IMG/VR virus record: IMGVR_UViG_3300026768_000034
Coordinates: 1-5,170 of that record
Direction: 5' to 3' (one strand)
DNA: 5,170 nucleotides
A program made the position numbers and the translations under genes. Shown piece after piece: positions 1-4,956 of this stretch (positions are counted from its first letter, which is position 1; each line of letters begins with the position of its first letter). Under the pieces are notes generated by a model. It made no database searches and was not told where the DNA came from. It saw only the letters and a list, made by a program, of their open reading frames with translations.

Positions 1-81
1 GGTATGAATGGGGCAATGCCCCGTGACTCTGGTGAAGCCCAACGGCTGAGGATTGATATTAAATATTATGAAATCCTATGA
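1..81 (+). CDS. tnpB: C-terminal tail of a TnpB (IS607/IS200-605 superfamily OrfB, ISC1904-like), 5'-truncated by the window
   Basis: Frame 1 is open from base 1 to TGA at 79-81 and reads GMNGAMPRDSGEAQRLRIDIKYYEIL*. From memory this closely resembles the C-terminus of Sulfolobales IS607-type TnpBs (...RRGMN..RD.GEAQ.LRIDIKY.EI.). Not database-checked, and the RuvC/Zn-finger core lies outside the window. Confidence 0.7.
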   Translation, partial: GMNGAMPRDSGEAQRLRIDIKYYEIL

Positions 82-93
82 AGCCCAAACCCC
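1..93 (+). mobile_element. Right end of an IS607-like (tnpB-bearing) insertion sequence; boundary approximate (~93)
   Basis: tnpB tail followed by AGCCCAAACCCC. There is a 10-bp direct repeat TGAAGCCCAA (33-42, 79-88), TATGAA occurs three times (3-8, 67-72, 77-82), and GGGGCA-A-TGCCCC forms an inverted repeat (10-22). Short direct repeats rather than terminal IRs are typical of IS607 ends. Confidence 0.55.
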
Positions 94-105
94 GAGTCGC
101 TTCTC

Positions 106-117
106 AAACATCTGTTT
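106..117. repeat. Palindromic 12-mer AAACA-TC-TGTTT, copy 1 (15-nt identity 103-117 with 3230-3244)
   Basis: Read directly: ctcAAACATCTGTTT. Confidence 0.85.
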
Positions 118-1999: not shown

Positions 2000-2662
2000 T
2001 TGGCAACGGTATATACTAAAAAAGAAAACGAAATCCCTACTCCTGAGCAGATCCAGTTCGTTGTATACAAAGACGTATGCATGCAGAACAACAGCTTTGC
2101 GTATCCTACCTTAGCCATAGAGAGGCTGAACACTATAATGCTTACCTACTACAGCGACGAGGTAGAAGAGCTATGGAGGGAATTAGTCCTAAAAAGATAT
2201 GAGAATGCCACGTCTGAGGACGAACTAAGGCAAATACTAAAGATCGGTTGCGATATTATGTTCATCGTCATGAACGCGTCTGGTGAAGATGTTAAGTCGT
2301 TGGTAACGAAAATACTGAACAGCACAGGGAAAAAACATCTGTTTTATGTTAACGAGGAGGCACTTGTGGCTGAAAGTTCGTATCTCATAGACGTGTTGAC
2401 AAAATTCGTTAACCCCAACGGGTTCGACGTGTTGACTGTTCTGAGCATACTAAAGGACGTGCAAATTAGGACGGCTACTATGATTAGTAGTATTAAGGGG
2501 ACGTCGCTATACCAGACGCTTGTCAGCGAATTAGGCATAGATGAAAATACTATTGAGAAAAAATGCACGGCGAAGTACTATAGAGAATGCGTAACCGAGA
2601 AGAAAACGCAATTGTTGAAAGCGTTGCAGTTTATCAGGATGAATATAAATATTCCGCGTTAG
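2000..2662 (+). CDS. Hypothetical protein, 220 aa, probably alpha-helical
   Basis: TTG start preceded by GAGGTG (1993-1998), 8 nt after the previous stop. Last gene of the + operon. The start is uncertain. Confidence 0.8.
   Translation: MATVYTKKENEIPTPEQIQFVVYKDVCMQNNSFAYPTLAIERLNTIMLTYYSDEVEELWRELVLKRYENATSEDELRQILKIGCDIMFIVMNASGEDVKSLVTKILNSTGKKHLFYVNEEALVAESSYLIDVLTKFVNPNGFDVLTVLSILKDVQIRTATMISSIKGTSLYQTLVSELGIDENTIEKKCTAKYYRECVTEKKTQLLKALQFIRMNINIPR
2333..2344. repeat. Palindromic 12-mer AAACA-TC-TGTTT, copy 2 (extends to AAAACA-TC-TGTTTT, 2332-2345), intragenic
   Basis: Read directly, within the KKHLF codons of the 220-aa ORF. Confidence 0.8.
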
Positions 2663-2671
2663 AACTAACCT

Positions 2672-2680
2672 AAAAAAGAA
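2672..2680 (-). terminator. Oligo-T terminator of the - strand transcript in the 19-bp convergent gap
   Basis: The minus strand reads TTCTTTTTT just after the TAA of the 83-aa gene. Confidence 0.55.
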
Positions 2681-2681
2681 T

Positions 2682-2933
2682 TTACCATGTATTTACATTT
2701 ACATTTAGTTTTTTGAGCAATTCGTCCAAGAGGTCTTTATCCATCATTAAAACGTCTGCAATATCATCAAGGTATTCTTTCACTATTTTTTCCAAATCAC
2801 TACGATTAAACTGGACATCACCAACATCAACGTCAACATAACCCCTGAAGTCGTCGCATACGATCCCTTCATGCTCGTCGTAATCACATATGTCCTCTAT
2901 TTTGCTGTATTTTATGAACACTGGGACTTTCAT
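2682..2933 (-). CDS. Small acidic hypothetical protein, 83 aa (anti-defence/DNA-mimic candidate)
   Basis: ATG directly abuts the upstream TAA. About 21 D/E versus about 10 K/R by manual count. Confidence 0.8.
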   Translation of the reverse strand: MKVPVFIKYSKIEDICDYDEHEGIVCDDFRGYVDVDVGDVQFNRSDLEKIVKEYLDDIADVLMMDKDLLDELLKKLNVNVNTW

Positions 2934-3188
2934 TTAGCTCACGTCGACGACTACTAGCCTGTCACCTTCTAACCTAGCTTTTATTGTGAACACTGGCTCG
3001 TTCCTGCCGTATACTTTAATCAGTAGTGTGTTGTCGTCAATGATAAAGTAGTCATAGTCATCCCACGTCCTCATGTGTTCGTTTAGGAATTTTTCTATTA
3101 AGTTCTGGACAACATCCCAATCTAGCTTTAACAGACCTGTCCTATGGAAAATGCTTTCTTCTTCGTCATTCGAAAATTCCTGAGCCAT
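2934..3188 (-). CDS. Small acidic hypothetical protein, 84 aa (MAQEFSNDEEE...; 87 aa if GTG 3197 is used)
   Basis: ATG 3188 preceded by GTGGT, or a leaderless GTG 3197. About 18 D/E versus about 9 K/R. First gene behind its own TATA box. Confidence 0.8.
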   Translation of the reverse strand: MAQEFSNDEEESIFHRTGLLKLDWDVVQNLIEKFLNEHMRTWDDYDYFIIDDNTLLIKVYGRNEPVFTIKARLEGDRLVVVDVS

Positions 3189-3219
3189 TTTGACCACTAT
3201 ATAATACTATCAAAAACCG

Positions 3220-3227
3220 ATATATAA
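3220..3227 (-). promoter_or_regulatory. Archaeal TATA box driving the two small acidic genes
   Basis: The minus strand reads TTATATAT at -30 to -23 from GTG 3197, in the only sizeable intergenic gap of the - strand block. Confidence 0.6.
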
Positions 3228-3230
3228 GCC

Positions 3231-3920
3231 TCAAACATCTGTTTGTGAGTGCGGAACAGGATCTATTATAATTACGGAACATATCGTGGCGTTTTGTGCA
3301 TATATAACTAGGGTATTATCGCATATGTACGATTTTACTTCTCCGCCATTATGTACCACTGTTATGCTTCCATTTAGTGGGTAGTATAACGTCTGTTCTA
3401 TCAGTGCTGTCCCGTTTACCGTGATTTTTCCCTTCTGCACTGTTACATGCCCGTTATATAGTATCTGCCAGCCGTATTCCGATACCCCATACGACGAGTT
3501 GTATAATACAGTAAAATTAGGGTTTACGATCGGGTATATTATGCCTGCAGGGGCGAACCCGCTTATAGCTAATACAGCAGTTTGAGTGCCGTACAAGTAG
3601 AACGTAATTACATAGGGAGATTGCTGTGAAATAGCAACAGTAGGGTCTGGTGCTGTAACGTTTACTATAATACGGTCGTGTGACTTTAGGATTATTACGT
3701 TCGGGTACCAACGGTGGCTATTAACTGTCACTACTAATTCGTATGTTTTATTGGTAGGGTTTTGTATGCATACCGTTAGTACGTTGTACTTATTTATTCC
3801 TCCTATATCATAAAAACCCAATACCTTTGCGTGCAAAAACGGGTGATAGAAAAAAATAGAAAACGTGAAAAGAGATAGTATTATAACTGCTAATATTAGT
3901 ACGGTTTCAAACTTTTCCAT
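3231..3920 (-). CDS. Membrane-anchored extracellular (glyco)protein, ~229 aa
   Basis: Probable start is ATG 3920 (MEKFETVLILAVIILSLFTFSIFFY, a signal anchor) after GGTGGTGGGAG; the ORF track extends to 3953. Beta-rich V/T/N/Y composition and 7 N-X-S/T sequons (NKT, NVT, NFT, NSS, NGT, NGS, NAT). Confidence 0.8.
   Translation of the reverse strand: MEKFETVLILAVIILSLFTFSIFFYHPFLHAKVLGFYDIGGINKYNVLTVCIQNPTNKTYELVVTVNSHRWYPNVIILKSHDRIIVNVTAPDPTVAISQQSPYVITFYLYGTQTAVLAISGFAPAGIIYPIVNPNFTVLYNSSYGVSEYGWQILYNGHVTVQKGKITVNGTALIEQTLYYPLNGSITVVHNGGEVKSYICDNTLVIYAQNATICSVIIIDPVPHSQTDV
3233..3244. repeat. Palindromic 12-mer AAACA-TC-TGTTT, copy 3, 5 bp upstream of the - strand TATA box
   Basis: Read directly. 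Overlaps the last codons (QTDV*) of the 229-aa ORF. Confidence 0.85.
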
Positions 3921-4956
3921 CTCCCACCACCCATTCTGCATATTGTAACGCAAAATAAAACGTGAAATAATCTAAATCTCTATAGGAGAATATCCAAATC
4001 AACGCTGGGAGACCCCAAGCTAATTCTTTCCTATTATTATATAATAGGATTAATGCGAAAAGAGACACTTCAAGTACGGTATACACGAATGAGGGGATAG
4101 GTAAGCCGAACGCGGTAAGGAGTGAAAACGAAACGCCTTGCTGTGCAACTGGTTGCGTAATAGTTATAACGGACGCAAGGTACTGCTTTGAAATGAAGGG
4201 TATTGATGAAAGCAGTAGCGGTAGCACAAATTCTGCTATCTTTCTAAGTTTCTGTCTCTCAAATTTAATTAGGAGAATGGCTATCAGTATCGCGAACTGC
4301 TTTACGTCTGCAGAGATCCCCAGGAGCAAGTATCTTAACCTCTCATTAAGTAGGGCAAGAAACGCAATGGAATATGCGAAAAGGTCTAGTTCCTGCCCTG
4401 ACGCAAAATCATATGAAAGTGCGGGAAATAGGAAAAAGGATGCGATGAAAGCGTTTTCGTGTCTTTTGATGAAGGAATACGTGAAAGCCAAAACAGCTGT
4501 TATTACGTCTACTGTTTCAAGGTTGTGCAGAACTGCGACACTGATGAACGACAACGGGGGGTAAATATAGACTGACGGCATAAATGAGTTTGACGTAGTG
4601 CCAGTCACAACGTTATACGGGACGTGATATATGGAAAACGCTTTAGCCATTGAGTAAAGGTACGGGTTTTTTCCGTCTAGGAACAATTGCGACGCGTATA
4701 ATATTATTGCTTCCTCATCCGTCAGGATGGGTAACCCCGTCACTATATTCGCTACAGCTGTAATAGTCGCGATAGCAAAAGCCGAAACAATGAGTATCCT
4801 TTGCCTCACGAATATAGAGAGCATGCCTAAGGCGACGACGAGGAATGCGGAAGGCAGTAAATACGGTTTTCCGTCACCTAAAAACGCCGTCCCTATACTG
4901 GTTAAACCTAGCCCTGCCAAAAACCACGATATATTATCTTTCAATTTTTCTTCCAT
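3907..4956 (-). CDS. Polytopic membrane protein, putative GT-C-fold glycosyltransferase (GT87/DUF2029-like), 349 aa
   Basis: About 10 hydrophobic segments. A loop carries the acidic TDEE motif followed by LDGKNPY and YIYPPLS, and ISADVKQ has the conserved Lys. This motif order is typical of GT87-like lipid-linked-sugar transferases. ATG 4956 is preceded by GGGTG (alternative start GTG 4965). Confidence 0.7.
   Translation of the reverse strand: MEEKLKDNISWFLAGLGLTSIGTAFLGDGKPYLLPSAFLVVALGMLSIFVRQRILIVSAFAIATITAVANIVTGLPILTDEEAIILYASQLFLDGKNPYLYSMAKAFSIYHVPYNVVTGTTSNSFMPSVYIYPPLSFISVAVLHNLETVDVITAVLAFTYSFIKRHENAFIASFFLFPALSYDFASGQELDLFAYSIAFLALLNERLRYLLLGISADVKQFAILIAILLIKFERQKLRKIAEFVLPLLLSSIPFISKQYLASVITITQPVAQQGVSFSLLTAFGLPIPSFVYTVLEVSLFALILLYNNRKELAWGLPALIWIFSYRDLDYFTFYFALQYAEWVVGDGKV

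What the first reader, a model, noticed from the sequence alone, without database searches (positions are those of the whole stretch)
2682..3227. Stand-alone two-gene cassette of small, highly acidic proteins: anti-CRISPR/anti-defence candidates
Seen: 84- and 83-aa proteins with net charge of about -9 and -11, coupled stop-to-start (TAA-ATG), with their own TATA box, adjacent palindrome and T-tract terminator. They contrast with the basic or membrane proteins nearby. Established: many Acrs and anti-restriction proteins (e.g. AcrID1, Ocr) are small, acidic nucleic-acid mimics expressed from dedicated early promoters. I do not recognise either protein as AcrID1, AcrIII-1 or AcrIIIB1, so they could be new families. 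The function is inference.
Basis: partly seen in the sequence, partly recalled or inferred. Interest (0 to 1): 0.6.

Follow-up and report, generated by a model that had tools for sequence, protein, structure and literature searches.

The report
Mobile two-gene acidic-protein cassette, Sulfolobus virus
Two small, very acidic proteins of a Sulfolobus tailed-spindle virus form a real, self-contained, gain-and-loss gene cassette that also travels on Sulfolobales plasmids and other viruses; an anti-defence role is plausible but unproven, and both protein families were already catalogued as 'unknown function'.

Summary
On the minus strand lie an 84-aa ORF (3188..2934, net charge -9) and an 83-aa ORF (2933..2682, net charge -11), joined TAA|ATG. 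They have their own TATA box, an adjacent palindrome and a T6 tract. Both are real genes: dN/dS is 0.35 and 0.24, and an RNA-library contig spans the junction.

The window is a fragment of an SMV-like bicaudavirus. The proteins are not new families: they belong to PHROG 25804 / arCOG09874 and PHROG 17634 / arCOG09859, both of unknown function.

The pair is a discrete accessory module:
- SMV3 and SMV4 carry both genes; SMV2 carries only the 83-aa gene; SMV1 has neither.
- Hot-spring populations hold variants lacking gp84 or the whole cassette.
- The same abutting pair sits in integrated SSV-integrase plasmids of Stygiolobus. Single members occur in SSV10/11, ATSV and plasmid pHEN7.

A distant gp84 relative, rod-shaped-virus SRV ORF97b, is a published predicted anti-defence gene (ADG.19). 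The direct SMV2/3/4 homologues were not flagged in that screen.

There is no similarity to AcrID1, DUF1874 or any solved structure. The palindrome is a genome-wide SMV motif, not specific to the cassette.

Verdict: an anti-defence or host-directed inhibitor role is the best guess (about 0.4), and it is unproven.

The parts
2934..3188 (-). gp84: 84-aa acidic protein (net -9) of PHROG 25804 / arCOG09874. It has a disordered acidic N-terminal tail (about residues 1-17), then one helix packed on a four-stranded curved sheet.
   Evidence: ORF; charge; PHROG E 1.4e-42; homologues; AF2 pLDDT 78 with H24-38 and E44-49/54-60/67-74/77-83; dN/dS 0.35.
2682..2933 (-). gp83: 83-aa acidic protein (net -11) of PHROG 17634 / arCOG09859. 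The N-terminal part is a hairpin with two invariant Cys (C16, C26). The C-terminal part is an acidic helical region.
   Evidence: ORF; charge; PHROG E 5.1e-35; invariant columns; AF2 pLDDT 65; only 22 representative clusters among 1.84 billion proteins; dN/dS 0.24.
2931..2942 (-). Coupling junction GTGAGC-TAA-ATG. The last two codons of gp84 (Val-Ser) form a GTGAG Shine-Dalgarno-like box 4 nt before the gp83 ATG. A similar GTGAGC box precedes the gp84 ATG in relatives. The two boxes are the end points of the natural precise deletion of gp84.
   Evidence: Sequence; abutting stop|start kept in all paired loci, including distant plasmid versions; gp83-only loci read ...TAGTGTGAGCTAAATG under the same promoter; population joint 2942->3200.
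3219..3232 (-). Core promoter GAGGCTTATATATC (BRE-proximal bases plus TATA box), 32-39 nt upstream of the gp84 ATG.
   Evidence: Sequence; conserved as GAGGTTTATATA in 13 bicaudaviral loci including ATSV. The relatives' AGGTTTATATA equals the 3' 11 nt of the strong-promoter consensus quoted in PMC11065993 Supplementary Data 2. The window has one change.
3233..3244 (.). 12-bp palindrome, matching AAACAGCTGTTT at 11 of 12 positions, directly 5' of the BRE. It overlaps the stop codon of the upstream 240-aa ORF. Probably the operator of a virus-wide regulator.
   Evidence: Genome-wide counts: SMV4 30, SMV3 33, SMV1 25, SMV2 11 sites with at most 1 mismatch, against 0-1 for the control. In SMV1 it is the surviving boundary of the cassette deletion.
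2669..2681 (-). Terminator-like ATTC-TTTTTT-AGG directly after the gp83 stop (T6 at 2672-2677).
   Evidence: Sequence; ATTCTTTTTT conserved after the stop in 8 of 14 related loci.
2658..2669 (.). Short inverted repeat GTTAG-AA-CTAAC in the 19-nt gap between the convergent genes. It overlaps the stop codon of the 220-aa ORF.
   Evidence: Read from the sequence. Too short to be called by the repeat finder. Significance unknown.

Best explanation
The region is a self-contained, horizontally mobile accessory cassette of a Sulfolobus monocaudavirus-like virus.

Shown or well supported:
- It has one promoter, made of a palindromic operator, a BRE and a TATA box.
- It has a short leader and two translationally coupled genes. 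The gp83 ribosome-binding box GTGAG lies inside the last codons of gp84.
- It ends in a T-tract terminator.
- It encodes two small, soluble, strongly acidic proteins with no DNA-binding or enzymatic signature.

Inferred:
- Both proteins most likely act on host proteins rather than on the virus's own machinery. The same genes work in bicaudaviruses, fuselloviruses, a rudivirus (distantly), a cryptic pRN plasmid and integrated plasmids. These elements share neither replication proteins nor virion proteins.
- The most likely mechanism is stoichiometric binding and inhibition of a host factor that threatens any incoming DNA element, that is, an anti-defence function.
- gp84 would contribute an inhibitor-like alpha+beta cone plus a flexible acidic tail. 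gp83 would contribute an acidic helical surface. Either could work as a protein decoy or nucleic-acid mimic.
- Each gene occurs alone in some elements, so they are probably two independent or additive inhibitors, not an obligate heterodimer.

My probability for the anti-defence function is about 0.4. The cassette anatomy itself is about 0.9.
For: Real, selected, expressed genes
- dN/dS is 0.24-0.35.
- The promoter is conserved.
- A 440-nt contig from a metatranscriptome library lies on 2704-3143, across the junction.

Coupling
- Stop and start abut in every paired locus, including versions about 45% identical.
- The GTGAGC box sits at both gene starts.

Accessory and mobile
- SMV1 lacks the cassette and keeps only the palindrome.
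- SMV2 and four contigs have gp83 alone under the same promoter.
- ATSV and SSV10/11 have gp84 alone.
- Population joints remove gp84 precisely, or the whole cassette.
- The pair occurs in integrated plasmids of Stygiolobus. In S. islandicus Y.N.15.51 a 59-aa gene lies between the two members. In S. acidocaldarius only gp84 was detected.
- gp83 occurs in pHEN7.

Acidity is conserved family-wide.

Fold and family searches
- The gp84 fold is a helix plus a four-stranded cone. Matches are weak (NTF2, VirB8, cystatin, BLIP-like and immunity proteins; Z up to 7.4) and there is no catalytic family.
- Nothing was found in Pfam, NCBIfam or PADLOC.

Link to anti-defence
- The distant homologue SRV ORF97b (hhalign 94.8%, E 5e-8; PHROG 25804 E 1e-3) is ADG.19 in PMC11065993. 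A 97-aa SRV protein, probably the same one, is BFVD rank 2 with TM 0.59.
- In relatives the core promoter matches 11 nt of the strong early/housekeeping consensus.
Against: - No experiment bears on function.
- The direct SMV2/3/4 homologues are not among the motif-predicted ADGs of PMC11065993.
- The cassette's operator palindrome is shared with about 15 SMV4 promoters. A one-mismatch variant also lies at both major-capsid-protein promoters. Early expression therefore cannot be inferred.
- In integrated plasmids and pHEN7 the genes lie beside copG-rep. This would suit a replication or maintenance role.
- There is no similarity to AcrID1 (hhalign prob below 1%; Foldseek TM 0.34) or to any solved structure.
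- Acidity alone is weak evidence: SMV4 has other equally acidic small proteins.
- The RNA-library contig could derive from contaminating DNA (caveat stated).
Confidence: 0.4

Rival explanations
1. The pair is a maintenance, replication-control or regulatory accessory of Sulfolobales plasmids, for example an anti-repressor of CopG/AbrB-type regulators or a binder of a host replication or chromatin factor. Viruses picked it up secondarily.
For: - In integrated SSV-integrase plasmids and IMG/VR contig L025 the order is ~107-aa gene, gp84 family, gp83 family, CopG/RHH, ~128-aa basic protein, ~650-aa Rep.
- In pHEN7 a 98-aa gene plus the gp83-family gene lie divergent from copG-repA.
- In SSV10/11 the gp84 gene lies between an RHH gene and the Rep-like 643-aa gene.
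- Supplementary Data 5 of PMC11065993 comments 'likely a viral/plasmid protein' and names CopG and MazE/AbrB as the usual neighbours.
Against: - In SMVs the cassette stands without any plasmid Rep or CopG neighbour, and it is dispensable (SMV1).
- An intergenic gap of 55-168 nt usually separates the pair from copG-rep.
- In pRN1 only the orf56/orf904 operon is needed for replication (PMC4234260). That paper did not test these families.
- Neither protein has a DNA-binding fold.
Confidence: 0.28
2. The proteins take over the host in a way unrelated to immunity, for example by modulating the cell cycle, transcription or the membrane in favour of chronic carriage.
For: - The genes are accessory and spread across element types.
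- They sit between membrane-protein genes in SMVs.
- Other SMV and plasmid small proteins, such as ZapB-like and aCcr1-like ones, have such roles.
Against: There is no similarity to any cell-cycle or transcription factor, and no specific evidence.
Confidence: 0.17
3. The pair is a type II toxin-antitoxin or addiction pair.
For: - Two small coupled genes on mobile elements, next to MazE/AbrB and RHH genes.
- Weak Foldseek rows to BrnT and RelE (E 0.18-0.24).
Against: - Each gene occurs alone in complete genomes: gp83 alone in SMV2, gp84 alone in ATSV and SSV10/11.
- Both proteins are acidic.
- There is no toxin or antitoxin family match.
- The BrnT and RelE rows are not significant.
Confidence: 0.05
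4. The proteins are virion or assembly components.
For: The palindrome, in a one-mismatch form, also occurs at the capsid gene promoters.
Against: - The families occur on the plasmid pHEN7 and in integrated plasmids.
- The cassette is absent from SMV1, a fully infectious virus.
- There are no transmembrane or structural-protein features.
Confidence: 0.05

Closest known systems
SRV ORF97b (N617_gp33), predicted anti-defence gene family ADG.19 (Bhoobalan-Chitty et al. 2024, PMC11065993)
   Same: It is a distant homologue of gp84: hhalign 94.8% probability and 32% identity over 56 columns, and a PHROG 25804 match. A 97-aa SRV protein, probably the same one, is BFVD Foldseek rank 2. It is small and acidic (-5), and it is a single accessory gene.
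   Different: ADG.19 is only a prediction from a regulatory motif. SRV is a rudivirus. ORF97b has no gp83 partner, and its promoter motif differs from the cassette's.
AcrID1 (SIRV3 gp02) and other archaeal Acrs (AcrIII-1/DUF1874, AcrIIIB1)
   Same: Small, acidic, accessory proteins of Sulfolobales viruses, with their own promoters and a patchy distribution.
   Different: There is no sequence or profile similarity, and the fold match is not significant (6exp: rank 42, E 1.0, TM 0.34). There is no DUF1874 hit. No inhibition data exist. Unlike known archaeal Acrs, these families are also common on plasmids.
DNA-mimic anti-restriction or anti-CRISPR proteins (Ocr, ArdA, AcrF2, AcrIIA4): my own knowledge, not tested
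   Same: High density of Asp and Glu (21-25% of residues) and small size.
   Different: No structural resemblance was found. A charge pattern that mimics DNA could not be evaluated with these tools.
Accessory module arCOG08377 - arCOG09874 - arCOG09859 of pRN-type and SSV-integrase plasmids (pHEN7, integrated elements)
   Same: gp84 and gp83 are members of the last two families. The gene order and the abutting stop|start are identical.
   Different: The viral cassette lacks the first (~105-aa) gene and the neighbouring copG-rep. The bicaudaviral gp84 has an extra acidic N-terminal tail of about 17 residues.

Membership tests
PHROG 25804 / arCOG09874 (gp84) and PHROG 17634 / arCOG09859 (gp83) | Significant profile match over the full length | tested here: met
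   PHROG E 1.4e-42 (residues 4-87 of the 87-aa form) and 5.1e-35 (residues 1-80). The arCOG assignment follows from the SMV2/3/4 orthologues listed in Supplementary Data 5 of PMC11065993.
AcrID1 | Sequence or profile homology to SIRV3 gp02 | tested here: not met
   hhalign probability 0.3% (gp84 profile) and 0.6% (gp83 profile). The PDB sequence search did not return 6EXP.
AcrID1 | Fold like PDB 6EXP | tested here: not met
   Foldseek lists 6exp_F at rank 42 with E 1.0 and TM 0.34 for the gp84 model. The gp83 model was too uncertain to test (pLDDT 65, best Z 3.2).
AcrID1 | Binds and inhibits Cas10d | not testable with these tools
   Needs biochemistry or an interference assay.
AcrIII-1 (viral ring nuclease, DUF1874) | DUF1874 domain | tested here: not met
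   No Pfam family at E <= 1 for either protein.
AcrIIIB1 / AcrIIIB2 / AcrIA (SIFV2 gp15) | Homology to the founding proteins | not tested
   The founding sequences were not fetched. Both proteins fall in other PHROGs of unknown function.
Regulatory-motif-defined ADGs (PMC11065993) | Virus-specific early regulatory consensus upstream of the gene | tested here: not met
   SMV2 gp27, SMV3 gp36/37 and SMV4 gp28/29 are absent from Supplementary Data 1. SMV4 ADG-type promoters carry a different palindrome (CTAACTAGTTAG...TTTATATA). A distant homologue, SRV gp33, is listed as ADG.19.
Regulatory-motif-defined ADGs (PMC11065993) | Accessory gene, not conserved among close relatives | tested here: met
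   Presence or absence differs among SMV1-4 and within populations.
DNA-mimic proteins | Strong net negative charge conserved in the family | tested here: met
   gp83 family carries -5 to -17 in all members. gp84 family averages -7.7 and -5.7 for its long and short forms.
DNA-mimic proteins | Surface carboxylates spaced like DNA phosphates; binding to a DNA-binding protein | not testable with these tools
Type II toxin-antitoxin pair | Obligate co-occurrence of both genes, and a recognisable toxin or antitoxin fold | tested here: not met
   Each gene occurs alone in complete genomes. No TA family was found in Pfam, NCBIfam or PADLOC.

The most novel reading that the evidence does not exclude
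arCOG09874 and arCOG09859 are a pan-mobilome pair of anti-defence proteins of the Sulfolobales. Tailed-spindle viruses, fuselloviruses, a rudivirus and small plasmids would all use them to neutralise one host system that attacks any incoming DNA (CRISPR-Cas, pAgo or a still unknown system). They would move between elements as a promoter-to-terminator cassette whose boundary is the SMV palindrome. This would be the first anti-defence family known to be shared by archaeal viruses and plasmids.
Probability: 0.25. Interest if true: 0.65.

Novelty: new member of a known kind. Interest (0 to 1): 0.4.

Why it matters
Few archaeal anti-defence proteins have been validated, and none is known from the tailed-spindle SMV group apart from a borrowed antitoxin and AcrIII-1 homologues.

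This cassette is a clean test object:
- It is small and self-contained.
- It is naturally absent from the laboratory virus SMV1 and present in its close relatives, so a knock-in gives a direct gain-of-function test.
- It is shared with plasmids, which would point to a defence that acts on all foreign DNA.

If it proves to be a plasmid-maintenance module instead, it would still assign a role to two widespread 'unknown function' families of the Sulfolobales mobilome.

The genome-wide palindrome found on the way defines a probable SMV regulon that has not been described in the literature I could search.

Tried and rejected
- Complex prediction on gp84 + gp83 gave 'no answer' (score 0.00). It is not evidence either way.
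- The genome-contig scan with the gp83 alignment returned only two spurious bacterial loci, because the patterns were too specific. Host copies were instead reached through the search for homologous proteins and the look-up of encoding contigs.
- Foldseek against the PDB found no match at E <= 0.001 for gp84.
- VIA-wide gave Z up to 7.4 for gp84 (generic NTF2/cystatin-like) and Z up to 3.2 for gp83.
- The ESM Atlas returned only generic NTF2-like shapes or the protein's own cluster.
- Pfam, NCBIfam and PADLOC returned nothing. The weak PIP49_N rows are Cys/Asp composition.
- The PDB sequence search gave only de novo designed TIM-barrel hits for gp83, judged compositional.
- gp84 and gp83 are not paralogues (hhalign 0.4%).
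- tblastn of gp84 against plasmids found no match.
- Literature searches for the palindrome and for the arCOG numbers found nothing relevant.
- The SSV10 mutagenesis paper (PMC6080066) was opened but not used, because its SSV10 may not be the record MK054236.
- The sigma-70 promoter scanner was not used, because it does not model archaeal promoters.
- The TA-pair and virion-protein readings were considered and rejected (see rivals).
Full report
**What the window is.** The 5170-bp window is a complete IMG/VR contig. It is 83-86% identical in DNA to Sulfolobus monocaudaviruses SMV4, SMV1/SMV1a and SMV3, which are tailed spindle viruses of the Bicaudaviridae. Parts of it occur in hot-spring metagenomes from 20 studies. 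All larger ORFs match PHROG families of these viruses. The layout is a five-gene plus-strand operon (145-2662) converging on four minus-strand genes. Those four are a 352-aa and a 240-aa membrane protein, followed by the two small ORFs of the finding.

**The observation.** Both ORFs lie on the minus strand. gp84 runs 3188..2934 and gp83 runs 2933..2682.
- Net charges are -9 and -11, with pI 4.44 and 4.22.
- The junction reads GTG AGC TAA ATG.
- Upstream, on the minus strand, the order is: the palindrome (3244..3233, 11 of 12 matches to AAACAGCTGTTT), then GAGG, a TATA box (CTTATATAT), about 30 nt, and the ATG.
- Downstream, four bases after the stop, lies a T6 tract. It is followed by a 5-bp-arm inverted repeat in the 19-nt gap to the convergent gene.
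- The neighbours include basic (+13, +7) and hydrophobic proteins.

The description is therefore confirmed.

**The genes are real and form one unit.**
- Word searches found 22 gp84 and 32 gp83 homologues. A profile search found 120 for gp84.
- An exhaustive profile search of 1.84 billion representatives found only 22 clusters for gp83, nearly all stand-alone proteins of 80-100 aa. The family is real but narrow.
- Median pairwise dN/dS among ten SMV-like loci is 0.35 (gp84) and 0.24 (gp83).
- In every locus that has both genes, the stop of the first abuts the start of the second. This holds even in versions only about 45-50% identical from plasmid-like elements.
- The last codons of gp84 (Val-Ser, GTGAGC) form a GTGAG box 4 nt before the gp83 ATG. 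In most relatives a similar GTGAGC box precedes the gp84 ATG. I read this as the ribosome-binding box of each gene, and hence translational coupling. This is inference.
- The 65 nt upstream of gp84 are conserved in 13 bicaudaviral loci, including Acidianus tailed spindle virus. ATTCTTTTTT follows the gp83 stop in 8 of 14 loci.
- A 440-nt contig from a metatranscriptome library lies on 2704-3143, across the gene junction, with 15 differences. This is compatible with a bicistronic RNA. Contigs cannot prove a single transcript, and DNA carry-over is possible.

**The cassette is accessory and mobile.**
- SMV4 (gp28/29) and SMV3 (gp36/37) have both genes at the same place.
- SMV2 has only the gp83 homologue, gp27.
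- SMV1 and SMV1a have neither. The slot holds a MITE, and only the palindrome with its left flank survives. One deletion end point therefore lies at the palindrome.
- Four IMG/VR contigs carry gp83 alone. Three of them have the same palindrome-TATA promoter and leader as the full cassette (L031-L033).
- One metagenome contig joins 2942 to 3200, which reproduces exactly that gp83-only form. Other contigs jump from 2662/2663 to 3393, lacking or replacing the whole cassette.
- ATSV (D85b) and the fuselloviruses SSV10/SSV11 carry gp84 alone.
- Plasmid pHEN7 carries gp83 downstream of an unrelated 98-aa gene, divergent from copG-repA.
- In Stygiolobus chromosomes the abutting pair sits inside roughly 7-kb elements with an SSV-type integrase. 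The order is ~107-aa gene, gp84 family, gp83 family, RHH/CopG, ~128-aa basic protein, ~650-aa replication protein.
- In the S. islandicus Y.N.15.51 element a 59-aa gene lies between the two members. In S. acidocaldarius only the gp84 member was detected.
- Supplementary Data 5 of Bhoobalan-Chitty et al. 2024 (PMC11065993) places the SMV orthologues in arCOG09874 and arCOG09859. It names arCOG09859 as the conserved neighbour of arCOG09874 and comments 'likely a viral/plasmid protein'.

**The proteins.**
- *gp84.* AF2 with 18 sequences gives pLDDT 78. The model has a disordered acidic tail (about residues 1-17, present only in bicaudaviral versions), one helix and a four-stranded antiparallel sheet. 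Foldseek finds nothing significant in the PDB. An exhaustive structural search gives Z up to 7.4 to NTF2-like, VirB8-like, cystatin-like, BLIP-like and colicin-immunity folds, which is the level expected for a common arrangement. The Atlas gives the same picture.
- *gp83.* The model is uncertain (pLDDT 65). It shows an N-terminal hairpin carrying the two invariant cysteines (C16, C26) and three short acidic helices. It has no structural match.
- Neither protein matches Pfam, NCBIfam, PADLOC or any solved structure.
- They are not paralogues.
- Acidity is a conserved family property: gp83 family -5 to -17, gp84 family mean -7.7 (long form) and -5.7 (short form). In SMV4 the two proteins rank third and fourth most acidic of 26 small proteins, so the property is marked but not unique.

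**Link to anti-defence.**
- Foldseek against viral models ranked a 97-aa Stygiolobus rod-shaped virus protein second (TM 0.59).
- SRV ORF97b (gp33), probably that protein, aligns with the gp84 profile at 94.8% probability (E 5e-8, 32% identity over 56 columns). It also hits PHROG 25804 (E 1e-3).
- This gene is ADG.19, a predicted anti-defence gene, in PMC11065993.
- Against this, that paper's ADG lists for SMV2, SMV3 and SMV4 do not contain the direct homologues.
- AcrID1 is unrelated by profile comparison (probability below 1%).

**The promoter and the palindrome.**
- In relatives the core promoter AGGTTTATATA equals the last 11 nt of the strong-promoter consensus GAAATAGAAAGKTTTATATA quoted in the paper's supplement. 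The window has one change.
- The palindrome is not a private operator. With at most one mismatch it occurs 30, 33, 25 and 11 times in SMV4, SMV3, SMV1 and SMV2, against 0-1 for a reversed control. In the window it occurs 4 times at that cut-off. With up to two mismatches there are 5 sites, against 0.34 expected.
- In SMV4, 15 of 29 sites lie within 120 nt upstream of a start codon.
- A one-mismatch variant (AAACATATGTTT) lies at both major-capsid-protein promoters. At those and several other SMV4 promoters the motif lies downstream of the TATA box, near the expected transcription start.
- At the cassette, and at the window's own five-gene operon (106-117), it lies directly upstream of the TATA box.
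- SMV4 promoters of published ADGs carry a different palindrome (CTAACTAGTTAG).
- The cassette thus belongs to a large virus-wide regulon. Its timing cannot be read from the sequence.

**Interpretation.**
- *Shown:* this is a promoter-to-terminator two-gene cassette under purifying selection, gained and lost as a unit or gene by gene. It is shared among element types that have no replication or virion genes in common.
- *Inferred:* its products act on the host. The best single guess is stoichiometric inhibition of a host defence component by protein binding or mimicry (probability about 0.4).
- Each gene occurs alone in complete genomes. This argues against an obligate complex and against a toxin-antitoxin pair.
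- The main rival is a plasmid maintenance or regulatory role (about 0.28), supported by the constant neighbourhood of copG-rep in plasmids. A further rival is host takeover unrelated to immunity (about 0.17).
- A structure-based binding test of gp84 with gp83 gave no verdict and is not used.

**Novelty and score.** The genes were already annotated as hypothetical proteins and grouped in PHROG and arCOG families of unknown function. The anti-defence idea is plausible and cheaply testable, but unproven. If true it would add new families to a known kind. I score interest at 0.4.

Noticed in passing
window 106-117, 2333-2344, 3233-3244, 4491-4502; SMV4 record (L046), 29 sites: The 12-bp palindrome AAACAGCTGTTT, often followed by GAG, is strongly over-represented in SMV genomes. 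With at most 1 mismatch there are 30 (SMV4), 33 (SMV3), 25 (SMV1) and 11 (SMV2) sites, only 2 in ATSV, and 0-1 for the control. About half the SMV4 sites lie within 120 nt upstream of start codons, and a one-mismatch variant lies at both major-capsid-protein promoters. The motif sits either just after or just before the TATA box. It is probably the operator of a virus-wide regulator. I found no description of it in the searchable literature.
   Followed up: partly
window 19-93: This stretch is 96% identical to a segment of Acidianus tailed spindle virus annotated as transposase/hypothetical. In metagenome and metatranscriptome contigs its depth is 100-1000 times that of the rest of the window. 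Many different sequences continue beyond position 93. It looks like the end of a high-copy mobile element (MITE or IS) at the contig edge.
   Followed up: no
L001 (SMV1) 5541-6036, corresponding to window 2663-3230: In SMV1 the cassette slot holds MITE-SMN2. Only the palindrome with its left flank (TTCCGCTCTCACAAACAGCTGTTTG) remains, with no TATA box and no gene remnants. One deletion boundary therefore coincides with the palindrome.
   Followed up: yes
window 2942/3200 and 2662-2663/3393 (metagenome contigs X1, X2): Natural variants coexist in the same hot-spring populations. One is a precise loss of gp84 between two GTGAGC boxes. Another lacks or replaces the whole cassette. A third replaces gp83 by a diverged 234-nt version.
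   Followed up: partly
SMV4 gp40, gp58 (CopG) and gp39 promoters (L046 about 36090-36800 and 45984-46080): A second promoter class shares CTAAC[T/C]AGTT[A/G]GGCAGAAAATTTA[T/A]ATA, an inverted repeat overlapping the BRE. gp40 is a published ADG (ADG.72), so this is probably the ADG motif described for SMV2 in PMC11065993.
   Followed up: no
SMV4 gp28, gp55, gp56 (L046 30554, 44645, 44994): Three unrelated small SMV4 proteins start with M-A/S-Q-E-F/W followed by a polar acidic stretch. All three have a palindrome match (at most one mismatch) upstream. This may be a shared 5' gene end or N-terminal motif, or coincidence.
   Followed up: no
L025 3085-4596; L044/L045 5681-9200; L011 (pHEN7) 875-1410: A ~100-107-aa protein (arCOG08377; weak PHROG 30244 match) precedes the gp84/gp83 families in plasmid-type elements. 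It is absent from the viral cassette. A ~125-170-aa basic protein always precedes the ~650-aa Rep. Both are of unknown function.
   Followed up: no
L019, L024, L029, L035 (IMG/VR contigs), directly after the gp83 homologue: In some SMV-like contigs the T-tract is replaced by a third small gene (70 aa, starting MI[A/T]KYPEHL) that begins 5 nt after the gp83 stop. It is followed by a large convergent nucleotidyltransferase-like ORF.
   Followed up: no
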